Origin: Octopus sinensis | Lineage: Eukaryota | Assembly: GCF_006345805.1 (NCBI RefSeq) | Contig: NW_021836975.1 | Coordinates: 1-22,285, forward strand | Direction: 5' to 3' | DNA length: 22,285 nucleotides | Part shown: positions 1-22,285 of the stretch, piece after piece | Numbering within the stretch: the stretch's first letter is position 1 | How the letters are laid out: each line of letters begins with the position of its first letter | Made by a program: the position numbers and the translations under genes | Notes under the pieces: generated by a model | Database searches by the model: none | Told to the model about the DNA's origin: nothing | The model's input: the letters and a program-made list of their open reading frames with translations, nothing else

Positions 1-533
1 ACCCTCTCTCACGAACTTACTGGCCTTGGACAAAATTTACTAACCAATATTCTTTCAGTAGTTAAGGCGGCGAGGAAGTAGAATCGTTAGCGCGCCTTGC
101 AAAATGCTTAGCAGCATTTCATCTGTCTTTACGCTCTGAGTGCAAACTCCACCGAGGTTGACTTTGCCCCTCAGCATTTCGGGGTCGATAAAATAAGTAC
201 CAGTTGTGCACTGGTGTCGATTTAATCGACTACGCCCTCCCATGAACTTGCTGATTTTGTTCCAAAATTAGAAACCAATATTCTTTCAGACGTTAAGGGA
301 GACAAACTGGCAGTATCTTTAGCATGCCGGGTGAAACGCTTAGCAGCATTTTGTCTGTTCTTACGTTCTGAGTTCAAATTCCACCGAGGTTGACTTAGCC
401 TTTCATCCTTTCGGAGGTCGATAAAATAAGTACCAATTGAGAACTGAAAGTCTATGTAATCGACTGAACCCTTCCTAAGAACTTGCTGGTCTTGTGCCAA
501 AATTTGAAACCGGTATTCTGTCAAACGTTGACA
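1..533 (+). mobile_element. Head-to-tail tandem array of tRNA-derived SINE, here called type A (tail of one copy at 1-50, copies at ~65-273 and ~296-510)
   Basis: Heads AAGGCGGCGAG.. and GCAG..GTTAGC; B-box-like GAGTTCAAATTCC; central GCCTTTCATCCTTTCGGGGTCGATAAAATAAGTACC; tail CTTGCTGG(T/C)CTTGTGCCAAAATTTGAAACC. The spacer ACCAATATTCTTTCAG..GTTAAG recurs at 43, 274 and (degenerate) 509. Resembles the octopus tRNA-derived SINEs (OK/OR1/OR2 group); exact family not assignable by eye. Confidence 0.9.
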
Positions 534-699: not shown

Positions 700-2641
700 T
701 CCTGGACGCTGTGTATTCGCCCTCATATATTACATCACAGGAATCTGTTATTAGATCTAGTTTGTGGTTATTAAATTCTTTTAATGCTTCTCCTGATATT
801 TCTTCTACTACAGTTGCCTTCCCATCTTTCATTGACTTTTTTTTTCATATCTTTCTTACGTCTTTCAAATATTTTTTTATTTCATTAACAGCCTCGAAAT
901 TGGGAATAGAAAGTCAGTTCTCACCATCGAACAGTTCTTATGTATATTGATTCCATCAGGATGTAATCTGATCATGATCAAACAGTAAGTATCAAACATT
1001 TTTTCCTTAATGTTACCAATTTGTTTACTCATGCATTTTCTGTTCGCGATCTCGTTTATTTCACTGCTTATTTCTCTAGGTTTTTACTGGTTAGGTTTTA
1101 CAACAACTGAACAGTGACCAATTGATCATCCAACCATTTGGGTGTTTGCTCTTCTTACAACCGAAACAGATCTGTTTATTTACACTCCTGTATCTATCTT
1201 CACTTACATTCCTCTGTTTCTCCAATTTGCGATAGAAACTCATCATTAATACATTTTCTTTCCTCATCCATTTCAAGCAAAGTTCCTTCACTGATTAGAA
1301 TATTTCACTTTTGTATTTCGTTTGCAAGAATTTTGTTGTCAACACGTGTAGGGAAATAGATTTTGCTATAAATCCTGATGTTCATTACGCCAGTAATAAA
1401 TACACGCACTGGTTCTATTTCACATCTTTTAATTTCATTTTCCATTGGTCAACCGTTTCAGCAATTAAATAATAGATTCTTTGATTAATCGTTTGGCCAA
1501 TAAACCATTCAGCTAGGTTTGTTATAACTCCTGATACTCATTACGCCAGTAATAAATACACGCACTGGTTCTATTTCACTTCTTTTAATTTCATCTTCAA
1601 TTAGTTAACCGTTTCACCAATTAAATAACAGATTCTTTGATTAATCGTTTGGTCAATAAACCATTCAGCTAGGTTTGTTATAACTCCTGATGTTCATTAC
1701 GCCAATAATAAATACACGCACTGGTTCTATTTCACTTCTTTTAATTTCATTTTCCATTGGTCAACCGTTTCAGCAATTAAATAATAGATTCTTTGATTAA
1801 TTGTCTGGTCAATAAACCATTCAGCTAGGTTTGTCAAAGCCATTTCATCGCCAGTTTTGAAGCAGGTCTGGTGTAGAGAGGGCATTATGCTTGCACACAC
1901 GTTTTAATTATTCTCTATTTTTTCATTCAATTTGTTAAATTTATTACGCAGGACTTGTATTTTTTATTCATTGTTTCGCCATTCCACATTATATTTCCAT
2001 GTGCATCCTGTTTTAATAAGGTTAGATATAATACTCATTTATTAATCATTTTAATTTTCGTAAGTTCCATTTGTAATTTAATTAGCAGCGGATTATAATC
2101 TGGACTGATATATCAGCACTTGAGTATGTTTATGTAAATCTCACGCAATTCCTTAACCGCTGGCTTATCAATACAAACTCGATTTGATTACATATTATGT
2201 CACCGTGACATTTCCGCGTCCATAATCTTCAGCCGAGCGATTGCTGGAATAGAATGGTGAACGTTGGTGACAAATAAATTGTGTCTTTGATAAAAATCAA
2301 TCATTAGATCACCTTTTCCTTTCAGCAATTCTTTCTTTCACCATTTCTTCGCCCAAAACCATAATTCACTTTTTATGTTATTCGTATTTTTCACTCGCCG
2401 ATTTTTTCGCACTAAAATCTTCGGTTATAAATTTGGTTTCTTTAAGCTTTGGTGCGTCTTATCTCGATTCTGAATTTGTTTGTAGAAATCTTCTGACCTT
2501 CCATCATTGCGTTCTTGAGTAAGAACCAGTACCTGTACGATGCCGATGAAATGTTTACAGAACGATTTATGATTATCTTTCCGTGTCCAGAATCCAATTA
2601 GTGGTTTTCTGTCGGATTCCTCATTATGATTCCAACTCCTT
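700..2641 (-). mobile_element. Decayed RTE-clade non-LTR retrotransposon: APE endonuclease C-terminal half, linker and start of RT, with many stops and frameshifts
   Basis: Manual minus-strand translation gives colinear motifs: GVGII (~2625-2639), QVLVLTQ..EDFYKQIQ, EDFSAK (cf. GDFNAK), NYGFGRRN, GDLMIDFYQRHNLFVTN, RLWT..GDIICNQIEFVLISQRLRN (~2165-2190), SADI.SDYNPL, LLFDHDQI..WNQY..ELFD, KSMKDGKATVVEEISGEALK (~815-838), LDLITDSCDVIY. These match the BovB/RTE-type ORF layout. Confidence 0.88.
1374..1834. repeat. Tandem triplication of a 156-bp unit embedded in the RTE linker region
   Basis: Units start CCTGAT(G/A) at 1374, 1530 and 1686; the third copy is truncated at ~1834; the copies are highly similar. 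Confidence 0.97.
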
Positions 2642-2660: not shown

Positions 2661-2985
2661 GGCGCATGGCTCAGTGGTTAGAGCGCTGGGCTCACAATCC
2701 GGTGCTAATTAAATTACAAAAGGGGTTCGATTCCTGGATTAGGTTGTATGCTGTGTTCTTGAGCAAGACACTTTATTTCACGTTCACCCAGTTCAGTCAG
2801 CTGTACAAATGACTTACCAAGCTGTACTGGATTTTTGCCCTCTCTTGGATAACAGCAATAGCGTGGAGAGGGTAGGCTGGTATGCACGGGTTACTGCTGC
2901 CCGAACTTTTGTCTGGCTGAGTAATTTTCTAGGTGCAATCCCATGGTCATTCGTTACCGAAAGGTGGTCTAAACAACTTCCTGTG
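2661..2985 (+). mobile_element. tRNA-derived SINE (type C head) with CORE-like segment and long 3' tail
   Basis: A-box GGCTCAGTGG, B-box GGTTCGATTCC, then TGTTCTTGAGCAAGACACTTTATTTCACGTT..CAGTTCAGTCAGCTGTACAAATGA. The same head occurs at 6013 and 21832. Confidence 0.85.
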
Positions 2986-4122: not shown

Positions 4123-4262
4123 ATATATATATAGATATGCTATATATGTATAATATATATAATATAGATATATACAAATATATATATATATATATATATG
4201 ATATATATATATATTTGTGTGTATATATGTGTATATATGTATGTATGTATGTATGTTTTTAC

Positions 4263-4419
4263 ACGAGGAGCTTCTTTCTGTTTTCGTGTACCAATTCCAC
4301 TTGCAAGGCTTTAGTTCGTCCGAGTCTATAGTACAAGACACCTGCCTAAGGTGCCACGCAGTGGGACTGAACCCAGAAACCATTTGGTTGGGAAGCAAGC
4401 TTCTTACCACACAGCCACT
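4263..4419 (-). mobile_element. tRNA-derived SINE (type M), 5' half only
   Basis: Reverse complement reads AGTGGCTGTGTGGTAAGAAGCTTGCTTCCCAACC..GGGTTCAGTCCCACTGCGTGGCACCTTAGGCAGGTGTCTTGTACTATAG..GAAAACAGAAAGAAGCTCC, homologous to 5064-5452. Confidence 0.88.
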
Positions 4420-5063: not shown

Positions 5064-5452
5064 CTCTTTTAGTCTTTTAGTTGTTTCAGTTATTTAACTG
5101 TGGCCATGCTGGAGCACCGCCTTTAGTCGAGCAAATCGACCCCAGGACTTATTCTTTGTAAGCCTAGTACTTATTCTATCGGTCTTTTGTCGAACCGCTA
5201 AGTTACGGGGACGTAAACACACCAGCATCTGTTGTCAAGTGATGTTGGGGGAACAAACACAGACACACAAACACATATATATATACATATACATATATAC
5301 GACGGGCTTCTTTCAGTTTCCGTCTACCAAGTCCACTCAGAAGGCTTTGGTCAGCCCGAGTCTATAGTAGAAGACACTTGCCCAAGCTGCCACGCAGTGG
5401 GACTAAACCCGGAACCATGTAGTTCATGAGCAAGCTACTTACCACACAGCCA
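5064..5452 (-). mobile_element. tRNA-derived SINE (type M), near full length, with internal (TA/TG)n and (AAAAGAGT)-like tail
   Basis: tRNA-like head at 5400-5452; conserved block TTGGTAGACGGAAACTGAAAGAAGCCCGTCG (possibly the Meta domain, unverified); 3' part GACCGATAGAATAAGTACTAGGC..GGGTCGATTTGCTCGAC resembles the type A centre. Confidence 0.9.
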
Positions 5453-6578: not shown

Positions 6579-6584
6579 TCCAAA

Positions 6585-6800
6585 AAGGCGGCTAGATAGC
6601 AGAAACGTAAGCACGCTGGGCGAAATGCATACCGCTATTTCGTCTGTCTTTAAGTTCTGGGTTCAAATTCCGGCAAGGTCAACTTTGCCTTTCATTCTTT
6701 CGGGGTTGATAAACAAAGTATCAGTTGTGTGCTGGGGTCGATCTAATCGACTGACACCCCCACCCCAAATTTCGGACCTTGTGCCTAGAGTAGAAAAGAA
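6585..6800 (+). mobile_element. tRNA-derived SINE type A
   Basis: AAGGCGG..GCAGAAACG..GGGTTCAAATTCC..GCCTTTCATTCTTTCGGGGTTGATAAA..GGGGTCGATCTAATCGACT..GGACCTTGTGCCTAGAGTAGAAA. Confidence 0.9.
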
Positions 6801-7094
6801 AAGAAGGAACCTCCAAAAATACAAGATACATATATATACATACATACTTTGCAAGAGAAAAAATTAGATGAGAGGCAAACACAGATTTAACCCACGGTGG
6901 AAATATCATTGATAGTTTATCCTGAATTTTCAGTTGCATTGCCATAGTAAATTACATCGAAATTTAATTAACTTGTGACCTGATACCCAGTGCCCTAGCC
7001 GAAGAGCATACTGTGACATAAACTTGATGCCCTGAACCCAGTCTCTGCATCCCACCACATATATGTGCATGTATATATATATATATATATACTC

Positions 7095-11495: not shown

Positions 11496-11661
11496 AAAAG
11501 GCCGTTGTGCATCCGGATGTGTGTTTTATGGAAACTTCTTACAAAATTCGGCTGTCTTCCAACCGCTTTAACTATCATTCGCAAATACCACGATTAATGC
11601 TAATCAGAGTCTCTCTCAGTGGAGCATCTTCAGAGCAATTCAATGTTAAATCGGGAGACAA

Positions 11662-12040
11662 AAATTTGAACTCAGACGTAACAGCAGACGAAATACCTAT
11701 TTCTTTAATACCCACAAGGGGCTAAACACAGAGAGGTCAAACAAGGACAGACCGCCGGATTAAATCGATTATATCGACCCCAGTGCGTAACTGGTACTTA
11801 TTTAATCGACCCCGAAAGGATGAAAGGCAAATTCGACCTAGGCCAAATTTGAACTCAGGACGTAATGACAGATGAAACACCGCTAAGCATTTCACCCGGT
11901 GTGCTAACGATTCTGCCAAGTCGCTGCCTAATAAGGAACAGTCGACCTCAGTGAAATTTGAACTCTGTGTAAGAATACGTAAGAAATGCCGCAAAGTATT
12001 TTTTCCGATTTGCTAGAGACTCCACCAGCTCGCCGCGTTC
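11662..12040 (-). mobile_element. Type B SINE (type A head and centre with LINE-like tail) at 11698-11930, flanked by partial head copies (11662-11697 and ~11940-12040)
   Basis: Plus strand TATTTCTTTAATACCCACAAGGGGCTAAACACAGAGAGG..ATCGACCCCGAAAGGATGAAAGGC..TTTGAACTC..GCTAAGCATTTC..GCTAACGATTCTGCC; a second TTTGAACTCAGACG..GACGAAATACC abuts the tail. Confidence 0.88.
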
Positions 12041-12189
12041 CTAAGCTAGAAATTATTAATAAGGAGGTCGTATTGGTAGAATTGTGAGAGAGTATGTCTT
12101 AATGCTTTGTGAGATTAGTCACGTCTCTTTGTCTTCTTTGTTTAAATCCTGACGAAGACGACTCTGCATTTCATTTTTTTATTTTGCAT

Positions 12190-12404: not shown

Positions 12405-12463
<59 letters not shown>

Positions 12464-12620
12464 CGACAGATTTCTTTCAGTTTCCGTCTGCCAGACACAT
12501 TTACAAGGTTTTGATCCACCAGAAACTATAATAGAAGACATTTGACCAAGGTGCCACGTATTGGGACTGAGCCAGGAACCATGTGGTTGCGAAGCGAACT
12601 TCTTACCACACAAGTGTGCC
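12190..12620 (-). mobile_element. Type M SINE, diverged near full-length copy
   Basis: TTCTTTCAGTTTCCGTCT, CAAGGTGCCACG..GGGACTGA..GAACCATGTGGTTG..CTTACCACAC; internal (CA)n(TA)n as in 5064-5452. Confidence 0.85.
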
Positions 12621-15868: not shown

Positions 15869-16136
15869 TATATATAAATATAGTTAGATTGATAGGTAGA
15901 TAGAAAGATAGATTTTCGCTATTTTTCAAAATACGTGTTACAAATATACTGACTTTCTCTGATTTGAACTGGCATGGTGAGTCTACTGCCGTGAGAAAGA
16001 ATCACTTCAAAACTTGGTGTTTAGGAATTTTCTTTTACATCAAGTTCAAAATTTTACGACAGCCGTTAAACTGCCAGTACATTGCTGTCCGTCGTTAAGA
16101 AGTTTTGAATGCCAGGCTCGGAATGTTTTGAATGCA

Positions 16137-16646
16137 AATCCTCGGAACATTCCAGGAAATACCCTAATCCTCGGAATTTTCAAGGAAGTAATTTTCCCTA
16201 ATCTTCGAAACTTTCCAGTAAATACCATAATCATCGGAACTTTCCAGGAAGCAATTTTCCTTAATCCTCAGAACTTTCCAGAAAATATCCCAATCCTCGG
16301 AATTTTCCAGGAAGTACCATAATCCTCGGAACTTCTCAGGATATACCATAATCCTCGGAACATTCCATTAAATACTCTAATCCTCGGAACTTTCCAGGAA
16401 GTACCCTAATCATCGGAACTTTCCAGGAAGCAATTTTCCTTAATCCTCAGAACTTTCCAGAAAATATCCAATCCCCCGGAATTTTCCAGGAAGTTACCAT
16501 ACCCTCGGAACTTCTCAGAAATACCATAATCCTCGAACATTCCTTAAATACTCTAATCCTCGGAACTTTCCAGGAAGTACCCTAATCATCGTAACTTTTC
16601 CGGATGTAATTTTCCCTAATCCTCGGAACTTTCCAGGAAGTACCCT
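16137..16646 (+). repeat. Minisatellite of 17 units of ~29 or 34 bp (consensus AATCCTCGGAACTTTCCAGGAAGTACCCT) with a higher-order 6-unit duplication
   Basis: Units start at 16137, 16166, 16200, 16229, 16263, 16292, 16321, 16350, 16379, 16408, 16442, 16470, 16501, 16528, 16555, 16584 and 16618. Block 16229-16407 is repeated as 16408-16583. Confidence 0.96.
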
Positions 16647-16840
16647 GTAGCCCCTTGTGGTGAGTAAAGAAATAAGAAACGTTAGCACGCCAGGCGAAAT
16701 GCTTAGCGGTATTTCGTCTGTCTTGACGTAATGTATTCAAATTCTGCCGATGTCGACTTTGCCTTTTATCCTTCCGGGAGGATCAATGAATTAAGTACCA
16801 GTTACTTAATTTCGGGCCTTGTGCCTAGAGTAGAAAACAA
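16647..16840 (+). mobile_element. LINE-like tail (16647-16674) joined to a head-truncated, internally deleted type A SINE (16675-16840)
   Basis: GTAGCCCCTTGTGGTGAGTAAAGAAATA|AGAAACGTTAGCACGCCAGGCGAAATGCTTAGCGG..TTCAAATTC..GGGCCTTGTGCCTAGAGTAGAAA. Confidence 0.88.
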
Positions 16841-17089
16841 TACACGTTATAGAACAACACCGAAAAGAATGAATAAAGAAGCTAGAGAAGAAGAATGCGA
16901 TAAGGGCCAACGCTTAATGCCACAGAGTCGATTAAGATACATCCACTGGAACCGTGACTATTAAATAACTATTGCTTTGCTTCCTCGTTTCTGTTTGTAT
17001 TAACGCCATATTTACTGTCAAGTATTGACTATCGAACTATCTGAGAATATTTATTTAACGAGATCTTTTTTTTTTGGTGGTTTATCAAT

Positions 17090-17242
17090 ATCGTTGTCAT
17101 CACCATCGTCATCATCGTCTTCATTATCATCATCGTCATCACCATCATCAAAATTATTTTTGTTGTTGCAGTTGTTGTTGGTGTTGTTCTTGTTATTGTT
17201 AAAAAAAATTGTCATTATTATTATTACTATTATTATTATTAC

Positions 17243-17281
<39 letters not shown>

Positions 17282-17541
17282 CAATATTATATTATTATTA
17301 TTATTATTATCATCATCATCTTCATCACCATCATTCTCATTGTTCTTATTGTTATTAAAATTAATATTATTATTATTATTAATATTATTTTGTATTTTTC
17401 GAAAATCATCATCATCATTAGCATTAATATTATTTCTATTGTTTACCGATGTTATTGTTATTATTATCATTAGTATTATCATTACTATTTTTATTATCAT
17501 CATTATTATTGATTTTCTTCTTCTTCTTCGTCTTATTATTA

Positions 17542-17590
<49 letters not shown>

Positions 17591-17692
17591 CGTCATTTCT
17601 ATTATTGTTGTTATTATTATTATTATCATCATTATCATTTCTATTATCATTATTATTGTTGTTGCTGTTATTGTTGTTGTTGTTATTTTGAT
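17090..17692. repeat. Long (ATT)n/(ATC)n/(GTT)n compound trinucleotide repeat
   Basis: Direct reading; it generates the spurious poly-I, poly-L and poly-N ORFs. Confidence 0.97.
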
Positions 17693-18369
17693 TTAGAAGT
17701 ATTCGATTTTTTTCTGCGTACCATTTGTTGCTTTTTTTTCATTTTTCTTCGTTAATATTCTTTTTTAAAAATGTCTTTTTTTTTGTTAGTGTTTTATCGC
17801 ATCAAACTACTGACTTCCTACGTAACATTCGATCGTTTGTAGTATTATCGATTACACATTGTCTATTGCAAATCAATATACATAACTGTTGTATATACAC
17901 ATATACGTCTACGTCAATGTATATGTCTATAAATATATATGCATATATTTATAAATATATACATATATAGATACATATATATATATACATATATACATAC
18001 ATACATATATATATACATATATACATATACATATATACATATGCACATATATATATATACATATACATATATATATATAAATAAATATATATATAGGTAT
18101 ATATATATATATGTATATATATGTATATAAATATATACATATATATACATACATATATATTAATGTATGTATGTGCATGGGGGAGGGGGTGAGACAAAGG
18201 GTGTGACTGAAAGACGGCGGGTGGGGAAACCGATAAAGAAAAATCTGTAATAAATATTTAAATTTACAGAGATCGAACGTCCATCACTTAAAGGCCACCA
18301 CGGCGAAGACCAGCTGTAGAGGTGGCGTCGCTGCCAATACCGCCCAGTGCTACGATCCTCTTTGTCATC

Positions 18370-18750
18370 ATTGCTGTCACCAGTCAGCAGTAGTAGCAGC
18401 AGCAGCAACGTCAGAAGCACTGTCAGCACCATCGTCACCAATGTCATAGCCTTCTCCGCTTCTACCACCACCGTCCTCACCATCATAAGCCATTCCATCA
18501 CCCCTACCACCACCACCACCACCATTACTACTGCCACTAAAATAACCACCCCACCCCCACCATCACTAACAACGACGCCATTACCACGACATCCACCTCC
18601 ACTACTACCACTTCCATTATCACTAACAATACCACCACCTATACCACCACCACTACTACCACCACCACCATTACCGCTTCTGCCACCACCGTCTTCCTCA
18701 TCATAAGCCATTCCATCACCACCACCATTACCACTACCACTATCACTTCT
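18370..18750. repeat. (ACC)/(ACT)/(CAG)-rich cryptic simple repeat with an internal ~65-bp duplication (~18455-18520 vs ~18675-18740)
   Basis: CCGCTTCT(A/G)CCACCACCGTC..CATCATAAGCCATTCCATCACC occurs twice. Confidence 0.85.
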
Positions 18751-18764
18751 CCCTCATACGAAAT

Positions 18765-19030
18765 TGCTGGCCTTGTGCCAAAATTGGAAATCAATATTTA
18801 TCCAGAGTTAAGGAGATGAGCTGGCAGAATCGTTAGTACGTCGGACAAAATGCTTAACGGCATTTCGTCCGTTTTCACGTTGTGAGTTCAAATTCCACTG
18901 AGTTCGACTTTGCCTTTCATTCTTTCGTGGTCGATAAAATAAGTACCAGTCGAGCACTGGGGTCGATTTAATCGAGTTAAACCTCACCCAAAATTGCTGG
19001 CCTTGTACCAAAATCTGAAACCAGTATTTA
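18765..19030 (+). mobile_element. Type A SINE (18810-19030) preceded head-to-tail by the tail of another copy (18765-18800)
   Basis: AAATTGCTGGCCTTGTGCCAAAATTGGAAATCAATATTTAT..GTTAAGGAGATGAGCTGGCAGAATCGTTAG..GAGTTCAAATTCC..AAATTGCTGGCCTTGTACCAAAATCTGAAACCAGTATTTAT. Confidence 0.9.
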
Positions 19031-19093
19031 TCTTCACTTAAAAGTGACCGTTGCATTAGAGCACAAAATACTACGTTATTAACCTCTTATATA

Positions 19094-19228
19094 GACTTGT
19101 GGTGCATATAAGCACGTGTGTTTATAACGTTAGTGGGAGATAATCGGCTGCAACCATCACCGGAACTACAAGGCCACGTGATTTTGGTCTACCTTTCGAC
19201 ACGAGTGCCTGAATAGACACTGGGATTA

Positions 19229-19271
<43 letters not shown>

Positions 19272-19426
19272 GACGGAGAAATCGCTTCTGTATCTAGCCG
19301 AGAACGTATATCATTGACAAGGTCAAGAAAGGTCGAAATCAGGTGACCTGGTTGCTCCGGCAGTGGTAGCAGACGATAACCTCCCGCTAGCGATATAAAC
19401 ACACCTACTTATATGCTCCACAAGTC
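19094..19426. mobile_element. Fold-back MITE-like element with ~110-bp imperfect arms and a central (TA)n
   Basis: GACTTGTGGTGCATATAAGCACGTGTGTTTATA versus the reverse complement of the right end, GACTTGTGGAGCATATAAGTAGGTGTGTTTATA (30 of 33 identical). Similarity continues inward (GGGAG..ATCG.CTGC.ACCA..CCGGA..CAC.TGATTT). Confidence 0.85.
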
Positions 19427-19446
19427 CACTTTTAAGTGGGGCTACA

Positions 19447-19809
19447 TATCTATTTCTTTACTGCTCAGAAGGGGCTAAACACAGAGGGGACAAACAAGGA
19501 CAGACAAAGGGATTAAGTCGATTACATCGACCCCAGTGCGTAACTGGTACGTAATTTATCGACCCCGAAAGGATGAAAGGCAAAGTCGACATTGGCGGAA
19601 TTTGAACTCAGAACGTAAAGACAGACGAAATACAGCTAAGCATTTCGCTCGATGTGCTAACGTTTCTTATTTCTTTACTGCCCACAAAGGGCTACAGGGT
19701 ATTCCCTGGAAAGTTCCGAGGATTAGGGTATTTCCTTGAAAGTTCCGAGGATTATGGAAAATTGCATCCGGGAAAGTTCCGAGGTATGGGGGTACCAGCT
19801 CGCCGCCTT
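19447..19809 (-). mobile_element. Type B SINE whose tRNA-like head is split by a 127-bp insert (19668-19794) made of 3 minisatellite units plus a LINE-like tail
   Basis: Sense reading: AAGGCGGCGAGCTGG|TACCCCCATACCTCGGAACTTTCCCGG..AATCCTCGGAACTTTCCAGGGAATACCCTGTAGCCCTTTGTGGGCAGTAAAGAAATA|AGAAACGTTAGCAC..body..TTTAGCCCCTTCTGAGCAGTAAAGAAATAG. Confidence 0.92.
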
Positions 19810-20513: not shown

Positions 20514-20745
20514 TCGTTCGTTTATTGGCCACAAGGGCTAACAAAAATCAATTAAAACTTAAAGGGACAAAACACAGGACGAAAGTTACAAAGGGTTTTG
20601 TCCGTTTGAAAAAGGTCCATGTACAAAAGCAGGATGACAACGAAAAATAAGTAACAATTGAAACTCCCAATAGGGGGAGGCGCTTCGAAAGGTTTACTTG
20701 TGGAAAAACCCATAAAAGCCACGGGAGCCTGGTCAAAATAATAGT
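20514..20745 (-). mobile_element. Probable 3' UTR/terminus of a LINE ending in AATAAA plus (TTA)n
   Basis: Minus strand ends ..GTCCTGTGTTTTGTCCCTTT..TGTTAGCCCTTGTGGCCAATAAACGAACGAA(TTA)n; homologous to the type B SINE tail. No coding part is present, so the clade is not provable here. Confidence 0.6.
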
Positions 20746-20776: not shown

Positions 20777-20800
<24 letters not shown>

Positions 20801-20807
<7 letters not shown>

Positions 20808-21465
20808 ATATTTCGGAATGGTCATTTTACGAGTTTACGAGTTTAGCCAATAAAAATACACGCACTATATATTTGGGGTTATTTTGCTTCAGTGTTATTT
20901 ATTTTTTACATTAATCTTAATCTAATTTCGGCCAGAGTTCTTTCGTCACACTCCTGTGACCGCATCAGTGGTCCTTTGTTTTCTTCTTTCTTATTTGTGT
21001 CTCTCCTTACTAACCGTCAGCCATTTTGTATTTCTATTGTATGTCTTCATTTGCGCATGCTTATATCTCTATGTGCGTCTATGTTTAGTTTTAGTGTGTG
21101 TAATGTGGGGGATGCCTGTAATATTGTATCTTCTGTTTATTACGTTCATGTAATTTGTATTTTGTTTTTGTTGTTGTTGTTTTTGTTTATTCTTAGTTTG
21201 TTCATGTGTTTACGATCCACTTATTATTAGTCATTTACTATGCGTTATTATGTAGTATGTATGTATGTTATATATGTATGTATGTATAACAACAATACTA
21301 GTAATAATAATAATAAATCGAATCGAAAAAATATATAAGAACACTGGCCGAATAAATTAAGATTAATGTAAAAAATAAATATCACTGAAGCAAAATAACA
21401 CCAAATATATGTGCGTGTGTTTTTATTGCTAAACTGGCAATATGACCATTCCGAATATAACAATA
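20801..21465. mobile_element. Element bounded by ~130-bp inverted repeats (MITE or PLE-derived)
   Basis: 20801-20935 TATTGTTATATTTCGGAATGGTCAT..TTTGCTTCAGTGTTATTTATTTTTTACATTAATCTTAAT..TCGGCCAG matches the reverse complement of 21344-21465. Confidence 0.88.
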
Positions 21466-21657
21466 TCTGTTTCAACACACGACTTCACATAAAAAATCTT
21501 GCACAACAAATATTTAAACATATATATATATATATATATATATATTATTATTATTATTATTATTAAGGTAGTTATTTGCAATTTACAACCGAAAGGCAAC
21601 CAGTATAGTCGTCACTAAAGTAATTGAGAACACTTTCTCTCCCCTTCTGTTCACGAC

Positions 21658-21830
21658 TGTGGCTGTGTGATAAGAAGCTTGCTTCCCAACAACATCGATC
21701 TTGGTTCAGTCCCACTGCGTGGTACCTTGAGCGAATGTCTTCTACTAAAACCTCGGACCGACTAAAGCCTTGTGAGTAGGTTTGGTAGACGGAAACTGAA
21801 AGAAGCCCGTCGTATATATATAAAATGTGT
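21658..21830 (+). mobile_element. Type M SINE 5' half
   Basis: TGGCTGTGTGATAAGAAGCTTGCTTCCC..GGTTCAGTCCCACTGCGTGG..TTTGGTAGACGGAAACTGAAAGAAGCCCGTCG(TA)n. Confidence 0.9.
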
Positions 21831-22098: not shown

Positions 22099-22208
22099 TT
22101 CCTCTGTCTCCTGTTTCTGAAGAAGAGCTTTGCTCGAAACATAAAACATCCTTGGACTTTCCTCTGTCTCCTGTTTCTGAAGAAGAGCTTTGCTCGAAAC
22201 ATAAGACA
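22099..22208 (+). ncRNA. Tandem pair (60-bp period) of minimal type I hammerhead-ribozyme-like motifs within a Penelope-like terminal fragment
   Basis: TGTTT-CTGAAGA-A-GAGC-TTT-GCTC-GAAAC-ATA-A(A/G)ACA twice (22112-22148, 22172-22208). Stem I UGUUU/AAACA (copy 2 has a G-U wobble), stem II GAGC/GCUC. Stem III reads ACAU rather than palindromic ACGU. Confidence 0.65.
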
Positions 22209-22285
22209 CCCTTCCTTTCCTTCCCTGAGCGTCTTATTAATACTTTGTATGTACCACGTCCTCGCGTTGTTGTTTGTTCTTGTTG

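What the first reader, a model, noticed from the sequence alone, without database searches (positions are those of the whole stretch)
16137..19809. Minisatellite+LINE-tail module joined to the same nucleotide of a SINE head at two loci: candidate SINE-targeting, SVA-like composite retroelement
Seen: both loci (16137-16840 plus; 19447-19809 minus) contain the same junction, [29/34-bp units]-TACCCT-GTAGCCC(C/T)TTGTGG..AGTAAAGAAATA|AGAAACGTTAGCAC. At the 19.7-kb locus the upstream part of the head (AAGGCGGCGAGCTGG) sits on the other side of the 127-bp module, so the module splits the tRNA-like head at GAGCTGG(C)|AGAAACG with no TSD. The arrays differ in length (17 vs 3 units), and the host SINEs have different tails but share the variant ATGTCGAC. 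The module's 3' end is the LINE-like tail also seen on type B SINEs and at 20514-20580. Established: 3'-tail sharing lets LINEs mobilise non-autonomous RNAs; some Tx1-clade LINEs are target-specific for small-RNA genes and repeats; the primate SVA element is a VNTR-containing composite. Inference: a VNTR-carrying passenger that either homes into SINE heads or travels with the SINE as a composite, with the short copy being 5'-truncated.
Basis: partly seen in the sequence, partly recalled or inferred. Interest (0 to 1): 0.75.

Follow-up and report, generated by a model that had tools for sequence, protein, structure and literature searches.

The report
Retroelement hotspot inside octopus SINE heads
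Two copies of a minisatellite that ends in a LINE-type tail sit at exactly the same nucleotide inside the 5' end of an octopus SINE, and the same tail-to-SINE joint recurs at eleven other octopod junctions, which points to a general insertion hot spot in SINE heads and not to a proven SVA-like composite element.

Summary
Both loci carry [29/34-bp units]-TACCCT-GTAGCCC(C/T)TTGTGG..AGTAAAGAAATA|AGAAACGTTAGCAC. At 19.7 kb the first 15 nt of the SINE head lie on the far side of the 127-bp module.

The window is octopus DNA; the SINE family occurs in Octopus bimaculoides.

I recovered about 112 kb of other octopod DNA through SINE-derived ORFs. The minisatellite was never seen again. The joint 'type-B tail | AGAAACG' (SINE model position 19) was frequent:
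- 13 of the 16 B tails that abut a SINE join at positions 18-20.
- Left partners vary: whole SINEs, truncated SINEs, tail-only scraps, the VNTR module.
- Right-hand SINEs carry A, A' or B tails.
- SINEs that start at position 19 never follow unique DNA. Full heads are never directly preceded by a B tail.

Best reading (0.45): RNAs with the B-type 3' end, the VNTR element among them, are integrated at a fixed site between nt 18 and 19 of resident SINE heads. The 3' junction is fixed and the 5' junction varies.

An 'SVA-like composite that travels as a unit' is not shown. Local copying between the two loci is not excluded either. A genome-wide census could not be run with these tools.

The parts
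16098..16646 (+). 29/34-bp minisatellite, about 17-18 units. The first units (16098-16136) are degenerate. It has a 179-bp higher-order repeat.
   Evidence: TRF (16137-16646, period 29 x17.0; period 179 x2.5, 91% match). Core motif hits. Sequence.
16647..16674 (+). 3' terminal 28 nt of the module: type-B (LINE-like) tail end GTAGCCCCTTGTGGTGAGTAAAGAAATA, preceded by TACCCT at 16641-16646.
   Evidence: 24/27 match to the type-B SINE tail at 11698-11724.
16675..16842 (+). Right-hand (host) SINE of locus A. It begins at model position 19 (AGAAACGTTAGCAC), carries an internal deletion of about 45 nt, and ends in an A'-type tail TTCGGGCCTTGTGCCTAGAGTAGAAAACAATA (16811-16842).
   Evidence: Alignment. 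nhmmer positions 18-145, 106 bits.
19795..19809 (-). Orphan 5' fragment of the SINE head, AAGGCGGCGAGCTGG (model positions 3-17). The T at 19794 may be head position 18.
   Evidence: It is the only zero-mismatch orphan head in 134 kb.
19668..19794 (-). 127-bp module of locus B: 3.3 minisatellite units (19696-19794), including TACCCT (19696-19701), then the tail end GTAGCCCTTTGTGGGCAGTAAAGAAATA (19668-19695).
19450..19667 (-). Remainder of the host SINE of locus B, from model position 19 to its own type-B tail (TTAGCCCCTTCTGAGCAGTAAAGAAATAG, 19450-19478).
   Evidence: nhmmer 137 bits. B-tail census.
11698..11933 (-). Comparator: a full-length type-B SINE. Its tail (11698-11725) is followed at once by a SINE fragment that starts at model position 52.
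20515..20542 (-). Comparator: a related but weaker tail, GTTAGCCCTTGTGGCCAATAAACGAACG, followed by (TTA)n(TAG)n. It is not in a SINE head.
   Evidence: No copy of this element in 62 kb of O. bimaculoides DNA.

Best explanation
What it is. The window is octopus DNA carrying an abundant SINE family. All members share one head and body but end in at least three different 3' tails (A, A', B).

Proposed mechanism. RNAs that end in the B tail (...TAGCCCCTTGTGGGCA[A/G]TAAAGAAATA) are copied into DNA preferentially at one site in resident SINE heads. These RNAs are presumably the 3' end of a partner LINE and of its dependants. The site lies between GAGCTGG(C/T) and AGAAACGTTAGC, that is between model positions 18 and 19, and the insert has the same orientation as the host.

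Consequences.
- The 3' junction is set by the first-strand nick, so it is fixed.
- The 5' junction depends on how far reverse transcription ran, so it varies.
- A whole SINE copied in can anneal to the host's own first 18 nt and gives a seamless 'full SINE + SINE starting at 19' tandem.
- A 5'-truncated copy leaves the host's head fragment stranded upstream.

The two loci. The minisatellite module is a 5'-truncated copy of one such B-tailed element: a 29/34-bp VNTR lying just upstream of the last 34 nt.
- Locus B shows the complete architecture: head 1-18, then a 127-bp insert, then head 19 to the end.
- Locus A shows the same 3' junction in a different host SINE. The stranded head fragment has been lost, and the array later grew in place by duplication of a 179-bp block.

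Status of each step.
- Shown: the anatomy of both loci, the recurrence of the junction, and its strict coupling to the B tail.
- Inferred: that the inserts are the newcomers, that target-primed reverse transcription is the mechanism, and that a LINE supplies the machinery.
For: 1. Locus B is a SINE split by an insert. The 15-nt head fragment (0 mismatches) lies 5' of the module and the head resumes at AGAAACG on its 3' side.

2. Census of 22 B-type tails in 134 kb of non-redundant octopod DNA. 16 abut a SINE, and 13 of those join at model positions 18-20: window A and B, L085, L087, L091 x4, L092, L094 x2, L097, L103. The binomial P is 2e-22. For the subset not selected through the query ORF it is 6 of 8, P 1.5e-10.

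3. Coupling to the tail. Of 14 SINEs that start at position 19, 13 are preceded by a B tail, 1 by an A' tail and 0 by unique DNA. None of about 31 full heads is directly preceded by a B tail (Fisher P 2e-10).

4. The left tail is always B, but the right-hand SINE ends in B (window B, L087, L094, L091), A' (window A, L085) or A (L103). This is expected if any SINE head can be the target and only B-tailed RNAs are the insert.

5. Left partners are heterogeneous: full SINE, truncated SINE, 25-nt tail scraps stacked on one another, and the VNTR. This fits variable 5' truncation and repeated hits at a site that survives each insertion.

6. The two host SINEs show no special kinship. They are 84% identical, within the range of B against any other copy, and share one private variant (P about 0.2).

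7. The junction occurs in the window's species and in a more distant octopod data set, where SINE copies are about 65% identical to the window's.
Against: - Locus A has no head fragment 5' of its array. An extra deletion must be assumed.
- The insert has no target-site duplication, whereas a type-B SINE in O. bimaculoides has a clean 11-bp one (TATAAGGCCTA; L084 40605-40900). The integration would therefore be atypical for that machinery.
- No LINE carrying this tail was found, so the enzyme and its specificity are hypothetical.
- In 97 kb of unselected O. bimaculoides DNA there is no B|19 junction, only one A'|19. Most junction examples come from contigs retrieved with a query that spans the junction, which is an ascertainment bias.
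- Some units within a cluster share small tail variants (L087 TGTAG; L091 TATGGGCAATAAAATGAT). This hints at co-synthesis or local duplication and not independent hits.
- The two VNTR copies lie 3 kb apart and no third copy was seen.
Confidence: 0.45

Rival explanations
1. Composite family. One ancestral event fused head(1-18) + VNTR + B tail + SINE(19-end). The whole composite is then transcribed and retrotransposed as a unit through the SINE's own 3' tail. Locus B is a full-length copy and locus A is a 5'-truncated copy.
For: - The junction is identical in both loci.
- Each array holds a single shared unit variant, CCGGATG(C/T)AATTTTCC.
- Both right-hand SINEs share the rare ATGTCGAC (2 of 35 copies).
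- Locus A lacks the head, as a 5'-truncated retrocopy would.
- Short direct repeats sit at the outer borders of both composites: CGTTA-AGAA/CGTTATAGAA at A and AGATAT at B.
Against: - The border repeats are not significant (P 0.15 and 0.24).
- The right-hand SINEs end in different tails, A' versus B. The tail is the part that would have to be recognised for mobilisation.
- The 34-bp units contain TTTT, so a Pol III transcript from the head would stop in the array. The insert also splits the best A-box candidate.
- No other copy in about 112 kb of octopod DNA or in 1.8 Mb of octopus transcript supplements.
- The same junction is formed with many non-VNTR left partners.
Confidence: 0.2
2. Local copying. 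Only one locus received the module. The other acquired it from its neighbour 3 kb away in inverted orientation, by one-ended homologous repair (synthesis-dependent strand annealing or gene conversion) primed from the SINE body. Slippage in the repeats changed the array length.
For: - These are the only two VNTR copies seen in 134 kb, and they lie 2.8 kb apart in inverted orientation.
- Locus A lacks the head fragment, as expected if repair synthesis ended in the array and was end-joined to unique DNA.
- The tails differ while the 5' bodies share ATGTCGAC.
- The array length differs six-fold.
Against: - Homology between the loci is 88% over 165 nt and stops at the element borders; the flanks are unrelated.
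- The SINE bodies are no more alike than B is to unrelated copies.
- This does not explain the eleven other junctions at the same position.
Confidence: 0.15
3. The right-hand SINE is the newcomer. Reverse transcriptase copies a SINE RNA whose 5' end lies at position 19 (processed or prematurely ended). It then jumps end-to-end onto the 3' end of a B-tailed RNA, making chimeric head-to-tail cDNAs in one integration event. Alternatively, new SINEs are primed next to resident B tails.
For: - End-to-end template jumping is an established property of non-LTR reverse transcriptases (my knowledge).
- SINE clusters are the rule here, and A-type tails usually abut position 1 of the next SINE (6 cases), as jumps from a true RNA 5' end would give.
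- No target-site duplication is expected at internal joints.
- Some neighbouring units share tail variants.
Against: - It cannot explain the perfect 15-nt head fragment 5' of the truncated module at locus B.
- SINEs that start at position 19 are never found next to unique DNA (0 of 14), although unjumped copies should be.
- Right-hand SINEs with A or A' tails would have to be started by one enzyme and then always jump to B-tailed RNAs.
- No tRNA-like fold or processing site could be placed at position 19.
Confidence: 0.12
4. SINE-derived tandem array (satellite-like). A slippage or unequal-exchange event between the AGAAA of the head and the AGAAA of the tail created a (19-end) repeat unit, which then spread by array dynamics. 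The VNTR is a rearranged unit.
For: - Arrays of 3 to 5 or more units joined tail|19 exist (L091, L094).
- AGAAA is present at both breakpoints.
Against: - Units within an array are no more alike (54-69%) than units on different contigs (60.7 +/- 6%).
- The joint keeps both AGAAA copies, so no microhomology was consumed.
- The VNTR has no detectable similarity to the SINE.
- Right-hand tails differ within and between loci.
Confidence: 0.05

Closest known systems
Target-site-specific non-LTR retrotransposons (R2 and R1 in rDNA; Tx1-clade elements in small-RNA genes and repeats; NeSL in spliced-leader genes). Named from my own knowledge.
   Same: The 3' junction is fixed to one nucleotide of a multicopy target. 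The orientation is constant. 5' truncation varies. There is little or no target-site duplication. Repeated hits occur at the same site.
   Different: The target here would be another mobile element's head, not a host gene. No autonomous element with this 3' end has been seen. A type-B SINE elsewhere has an ordinary 11-bp duplication, so any specificity is a preference and not absolute.
TE-in-TE insertion hot spots, such as Alu insertions into the A-rich tails and linkers of older Alus through the L1 endonuclease preference (my knowledge).
   Same: Non-autonomous elements pile up inside one another at a preferred short motif. The site here, CGTTTCT|G on the bottom strand, is a pyrimidine run followed by a purine.
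   Different: The precision is to one nucleotide within the head, not a loose preference for tails. It is also strictly coupled to one tail type.
SVA (the hominid SINE-VNTR-Alu composite, mobilised by L1).
   Same: A VNTR lies between SINE-derived pieces, its length varies between copies, and it has a LINE-dependent 3' end.
   Different: There is no evidence that the octopus composite is transcribed or moves as a unit. Only two copies are known. The VNTR carries Pol III terminators. The two copies end in different tails. The VNTR part alone already has its own LINE-type 3' end.
Complex (dimeric) SINEs and the quasi-oligomeric CHRS SINE (SINEBase, PMC3531059).
   Same: SINEs can fuse head to tail into new families. 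CHRS carries a motif of about 20 nt repeated more than 10 times, so internal tandem repeats in SINE-like elements are known.
   Different: A dimeric family has one fixed architecture and one tail. Here the left partners and the right tails vary from locus to locus.
Stringent LINE/SINE pairs that share a 3' tail, such as eel UnaL2/UnaSINE1 (Kajikawa and Okada 2002, listed in the references of PMC3531059).
   Same: Different non-autonomous elements (type-B SINE, VNTR module) share only the last 27 nt or so. This is the pattern expected of a reverse-transcriptase recognition site.
   Different: The partner LINE is unknown. The putative 4-bp hairpin in the tail has no covariation support.

Membership tests
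SVA-like composite retrotransposon | Several TE-derived modules, including a VNTR, in one element | tested here: met
   Head fragment + 29/34-bp VNTR + LINE-like tail + SINE body at 19450-19809.
SVA-like composite retrotransposon | Dispersed copies with the same architecture, each flanked as a whole by target-site duplications | tested here: not met
   Only two copies, 3 kb apart. None in about 112 kb of other octopod DNA. Border repeats are not significant (P 0.15 and 0.24). A genome-wide census was not possible.
SVA-like composite retrotransposon | One common 3' end used for mobilisation | tested here: not met
   Locus A ends in an A' tail and locus B in a B tail.
SVA-like composite retrotransposon | Transcribed as a whole | tested here: inconclusive
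   TTTT is present in every 34-bp unit, which would stop Pol III. Pol II read-through was not testable. The VNTR core is absent from the octopus transcript supplements of PMC9115989.
Site-specific non-LTR retrotransposition | 3' junction fixed at one nucleotide of a repeated target, in constant orientation | tested here: met
   13 of 16 SINE-adjacent B tails join at model positions 18-20, all co-oriented.
Site-specific non-LTR retrotransposition | Variable 5' ends of the inserts, with the target's upstream half retained 5' of the insert | tested here: inconclusive
   5' ends vary: 3 versus 17 units, tail-only scraps, whole SINEs. The upstream target half is unambiguous only at locus B. It is ambiguous at L087 and absent at locus A.
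Site-specific non-LTR retrotransposition | An autonomous element (RT plus endonuclease) with the same 3' end | not testable with these tools
   No RT ORF in the window or in L084. No octopus genome could be searched.
tRNA-derived SINE | Head homologous to a tRNA, with A and B boxes | tested here: inconclusive
   A B-box-like GAGTTCAAATTCC and two 6/9 A-box candidates are read from the sequence. ARAGORN and Rfam find no tRNA in the window heads. Rfam at E up to 10 finds none in a near-consensus O. bimaculoides copy.
tRNA-derived SINE | Short, dispersed, many copies, target-site duplications, LINE-like 3' region | tested here: met
   About 45 copies in 134 kb. 11-bp duplication at L084 40605-40900. 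Three tail types.
Dimeric (complex) SINE family | Fixed two-monomer architecture amplified as one unit | tested here: not met
   Left partners and right-hand tails differ between loci. Arrays of 2 to 5 or more units exist.
Minisatellite (VNTR) | Head-to-tail units of 10-100 bp with copy-number difference between copies | tested here: met
   TRF period 29 (with 34-bp variants), 17 versus 3 units.

The most novel reading that the evidence does not exclude
Octopods harbour a retrotransposition machinery (the unknown LINE owning the ...TAGCCCCTTGTGGGCAATAAAGAAATA 3' end) that is targeted to one nucleotide inside the head of a SINE family, within its likely Pol III A-box region. This LINE and all its passengers, including a minisatellite-bearing one, therefore home into and inactivate resident SINEs. 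Over time they would build the nested and tandem SINE clusters typical of octopus genomes. This would be a mobile element specialised on another mobile element's promoter.
Probability: 0.35. Interest if true: 0.7.

Novelty: new variant of a known kind. Interest (0 to 1): 0.5.

Why it matters
SINEs make up a large share of octopus genomes, and their expansion has been linked to cephalopod genome evolution. This finding could explain three things:
- why these SINEs sit in tandem and nested clusters;
- how new composite elements arise;
- how one element family can disable another by splitting its promoter.

It would also add a SINE head to the short list of targets of site-preferring retrotransposons. 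Finally, the fixed junction is a simple sequence tag that can be counted and dated in any octopod assembly.

Tried and rejected
Searches for more copies that found nothing:
- Word-indexed protein searches with the two junction-spanning ORFs gave no candidates.
- Exact look-up of ten window ORFs found none in the collection.
- Scans of metagenome and viral contigs for the VNTR core gave only single chance hits.
- Scans of prokaryotic genome contigs and viral contigs for the SINE core gave nothing.
- A full-text search for six sequence strings gave nothing relevant.
- The run accessions of the Logan contigs could not be tied to a species.

What did work: an index-free HMMER search with a junction ORF. 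This led to the retrieval of octopod contigs and two O. bimaculoides chromosome segments.

Ideas tested and rejected:
- The VNTR derives from the SINE body or tail. Local alignment is no better than shuffles.
- The tail's 4-bp hairpin is a conserved structure. 70% of cells pair, the same as in shuffles, and there is no covariation.
- The head is demonstrably tRNA-like, with position 19 as the tRNA 5' end. There is no tRNA model hit even at E up to 10.
- Arrays are recent local duplications. Within-array identity equals between-contig identity.
- The joint is microhomology-mediated. Both AGAAA copies are kept.
- Loci A and B are a simple inverted segmental duplication. The flanks are unrelated.

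Other negatives:
- Whole-window Rfam at a lax threshold returned only microsatellite-driven miRNA noise.
- ORF listing of L084 showed no reverse transcriptase.


Full report
**What is in the window**

The 22.3-kb window is AT-rich (about 34% G+C) and dense in microsatellites. It has no convincing genes.

It contains seven copies of one SINE family: 60-282+, 298-447+, 6582-6803+, 11698-11933-, 16675-16842+, 18806-19035+ and 19450-19667-. All share a head (TAAGGCGGCGAGCTGGCAGAA[A/T]CGTTAGCAC...) and a body. They end in different tails:
- Type A: ..CTGGCCTTGTGCCAAAATTTGAAACCAATATT..
- Type A': ..TTTCGGGCCTTGTGCCTAGAGTAGAAAAGAATA
- Type B: ..TTTGTCTGTCCTTGTTTGTCCCCTCTGTGTTTAGCCCCTTGTGGGCAGTAAAGAAATAG

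A second repeat family (4217-4412, 5253-5448, 12417-12612, 21660-21822) is one I recognise from memory as a common octopus SINE.

The organism is confirmed independently. SINE-derived ORFs from this family are annotated in Octopus bimaculoides. Window copies are up to 93% identical to O. bimaculoides copies. Family-2 copies are 84-88% identical. The exact species is not determined.

TRF gives 17.0 units of 29 bp at 16137-16646. A 179-bp higher-order period (91% match) shows that a block of six units was duplicated. Three units lie at 19696-19794 on the minus strand.

Both arrays end TACCCT-GTAGCCC(C/T)TTGTGG(TG/GC)AGTAAAGAAATA and are followed without a gap by AGAAACGTTAGCAC. This is the SINE from model position 19 onward. 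The last 27 nt of the module match the 3' ends of the two type-B SINEs in the window, 24/27 each.

At locus B the sequence 5' of the module is AAGGCGGCGAGCTGG. This is a perfect copy of head positions 3-17 and the only orphan head fragment in 134 kb of octopod DNA. Locus B is therefore a SINE split by a 127-bp co-oriented insert, with no target-site duplication. Heads reading GCTGGTAGAA exist, so the T at 19794 may be host position 18 and no base need be missing.

Locus A has no head fragment. The array fades into unique DNA near 16098.

**Getting related sequence**

No octopus genome is searchable with these tools, and several routes failed.

An index-free HMMER search with the 67-aa ORF that reads antisense across SINE, junction and VNTR (window 19536-19736) gave 24 SINE-derived ORFs. 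Seven of them carried the same joint in protein form (..ANVS|YFFT.HKGL..). Ten or so carried intact heads (..ANVSASSPP..).

Through these proteins I fetched:
- two O. bimaculoides chromosome segments, L084 (62 kb non-N) and L102 (34.6 kb);
- nine non-redundant contigs from sequencing runs SRR118693xx of an unidentified, more distant octopod.

Together with the window this is 133.9 kb.

**What the wider sample shows**

1. The minisatellite is absent from all 112 kb outside the window. It is also absent from 1.8 Mb of octopus transcript supplements.

2. SINEs of this family are very often clustered head to tail.

3. Of 22 genuine B-type tails, 16 abut another SINE. 13 of those join at model positions 18-20: window A and B, L085, L087, L091 x4, L092, L094 x2, L097, L103. 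The chance expectation is 3/225 per junction, giving P about 2e-22. For junctions that did not contribute to retrieval it is 6 of 8, P 1.5e-10.

4. The coupling is strict in both directions. Of the 14 SINEs that begin at position 19, 13 follow a B tail, 1 follows an A' tail and none follows unique DNA. None of about 31 full heads is directly preceded by a B tail, whereas about 20 of them follow unique DNA (Fisher P 2e-10).

5. A and A' tails usually abut position 1 of the next SINE: six cases, against one at position 10 and one at position 19.

6. The left partner at a B|19 joint can be a whole SINE (L092, L103), a truncated one (L087), stacked tail-only scraps (L091) or the VNTR module. The right-hand SINE ends in B, A' or A.

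7. Units within an array are no more alike than units from different contigs: 54-69% against 60.7 +/- 6%.

**Interpretation**

The pattern is a fixed 3' junction, variable 5' ends, constant orientation, any SINE subtype as right partner and only B-tailed left partners. This is the signature of site-preferring target-primed reverse transcription into the SINE head. The VNTR module is one 5'-truncated passenger.

This reading also explains the absence of position-19 SINEs next to unique DNA. They are not independent insertions but the downstream halves of interrupted hosts.

A whole SINE copied into the site can resolve its 5' end by annealing to the host's own first 18 nt. That would explain the seamless 'full + truncated at 19' tandems. 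This step is inferred.

The two host SINEs are not specially related. They are 84% identical, within B's range against all copies, and share one private variant (P about 0.2). This fits two separate hits: for random integration, 2 of 2 at this nucleotide has P about 2.5e-8.

**Weak points**

- Locus A lacks the stranded head.
- The insert has no target-site duplication, although a type-B SINE in O. bimaculoides has an 11-bp one.
- The partner LINE is unknown.
- Unselected O. bimaculoides DNA (97 kb) shows no B|19 joint, only one A'|19.
- Most examples come from contigs found with a junction-bearing query.
- The only two VNTR copies are neighbours.

For these reasons three rivals keep real weight:
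- a composite that moves as a unit (0.2);
- local one-ended repair copying between the two loci (0.15);
- template jumping in which the right-hand SINE is the newcomer (0.12).

The composite idea is weakened by the different 3' tails, by TTTT terminators in every 34-bp unit, by non-significant border repeats and by the lack of further copies. The template-jump idea cannot account for the perfect head fragment at locus B.

**Comparison with known systems**

It works most like the site-specific non-LTR retrotransposons (R2, R1, Tx1 clade, NeSL; my knowledge) and like L1-driven TE-in-TE hot spots. Membership in any such family cannot be claimed without the autonomous element.

It resembles SVA only in having a VNTR between SINE-derived parts. 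The defining property, mobilisation as a composite, was tested as far as possible and not met.

SINEBase records dimeric SINEs and a SINE with an internal motif of about 20 nt repeated more than 10 times (PMC3531059). Neither fusion nor internal repeats are new in themselves.

The claims that the head is tRNA-like and that the tail forms a conserved hairpin could not be substantiated.

**Verdict**

It is best read as a new variant of a known kind: an integration hot spot at one nucleotide of an octopus SINE head, used by elements that share a LINE-type tail, one of which carries a minisatellite. The SVA-like label is not earned. A census in an octopus assembly would settle the matter quickly.

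Noticed in passing
window 19025-19448: A foldback, MITE-like element of about 410 bp lies between the SINE at 18806-19035 and locus B. It has inverted arms at 19094-19195 / 19325-19426 (102 nt, 77%) and terminal arms at 19025-19046 / 19427-19448, around an (AT)19 core. Its end GTAGCCCCACTTAAAAGTGG abuts the B tail of locus B. No copy in L084.
   Followed up: partly
window 60-447, 18750-19035; L084 4215, 66059-66640: SINEs with A or A' tails are typically followed directly by position 1 of the next SINE (tail|full head). Neighbouring tails share small variants, such as AAATTGCTGG in both tails around 18806. This hints at head-to-tail co-synthesis or targeted insertion at the SINE 5' border.
   Followed up: partly
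window 11643-12042 (-): Three SINE pieces lie in tandem: model positions 4-108, then a full type-B SINE, then positions 52-87 directly after its tail. This is a different nested arrangement from the position-19 joint.
   Followed up: partly
L084 69649-69760: A SINE fragment starting at position 19 after an A' tail contains a short telomere-like run (TTAGGG)x4 inside its body (GCTTAGGGTTAGGGTTAGGGTTAGGGGTAG).
   Followed up: no
window 1362-1834: A 156-bp tandem repeat, 3.0 copies, 92% match. Unrelated to the SINEs.
   Followed up: no
window 4217-4412, 5253-5448, 12417-12612, 21660-21822: A second abundant SINE family, read on the opposite strand as TGGCTGTGTGGTAAGAAGCTTGC...GGTTCCGGGTTCAGTCCC. 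It is always adjoined by (TA)n/(CA)n microsatellites. There are more than 15 copies in L084 at 72-88% identity.
   Followed up: partly
window 2665-2736 (+): A sub-threshold tRNA model hit (22.8 bits, gathering score 29, E 1.1). It may be the head of a third SINE family or a tRNA relic.
   Followed up: no
window 18300-18760: A CCA/CCACCA-rich imperfect repeat gives long low-complexity ORFs on both strands (183 aa and 119 aa). It is probably not coding.
   Followed up: no
window 20800-20942 / 21337-21466; 22099-22213: An inverted repeat of 143 nt (84.6%) and a 60-bp tandem duplication (1.9 copies, 96%).
   Followed up: no
L084 40502, 41264 (-): Another recurrent 3' end, ..TACTGTAGCTTGCTGTCAATAAATAAATAC. 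It suggests a further tail type or SINE/LINE family in O. bimaculoides.
   Followed up: no
L084 about 28000-28330 (+): A C2H2 zinc-finger-like ORF fragment (..HTFECGVCQRVCKSNGGLKRHVRIH..) lies next to an assembly gap.
   Followed up: no
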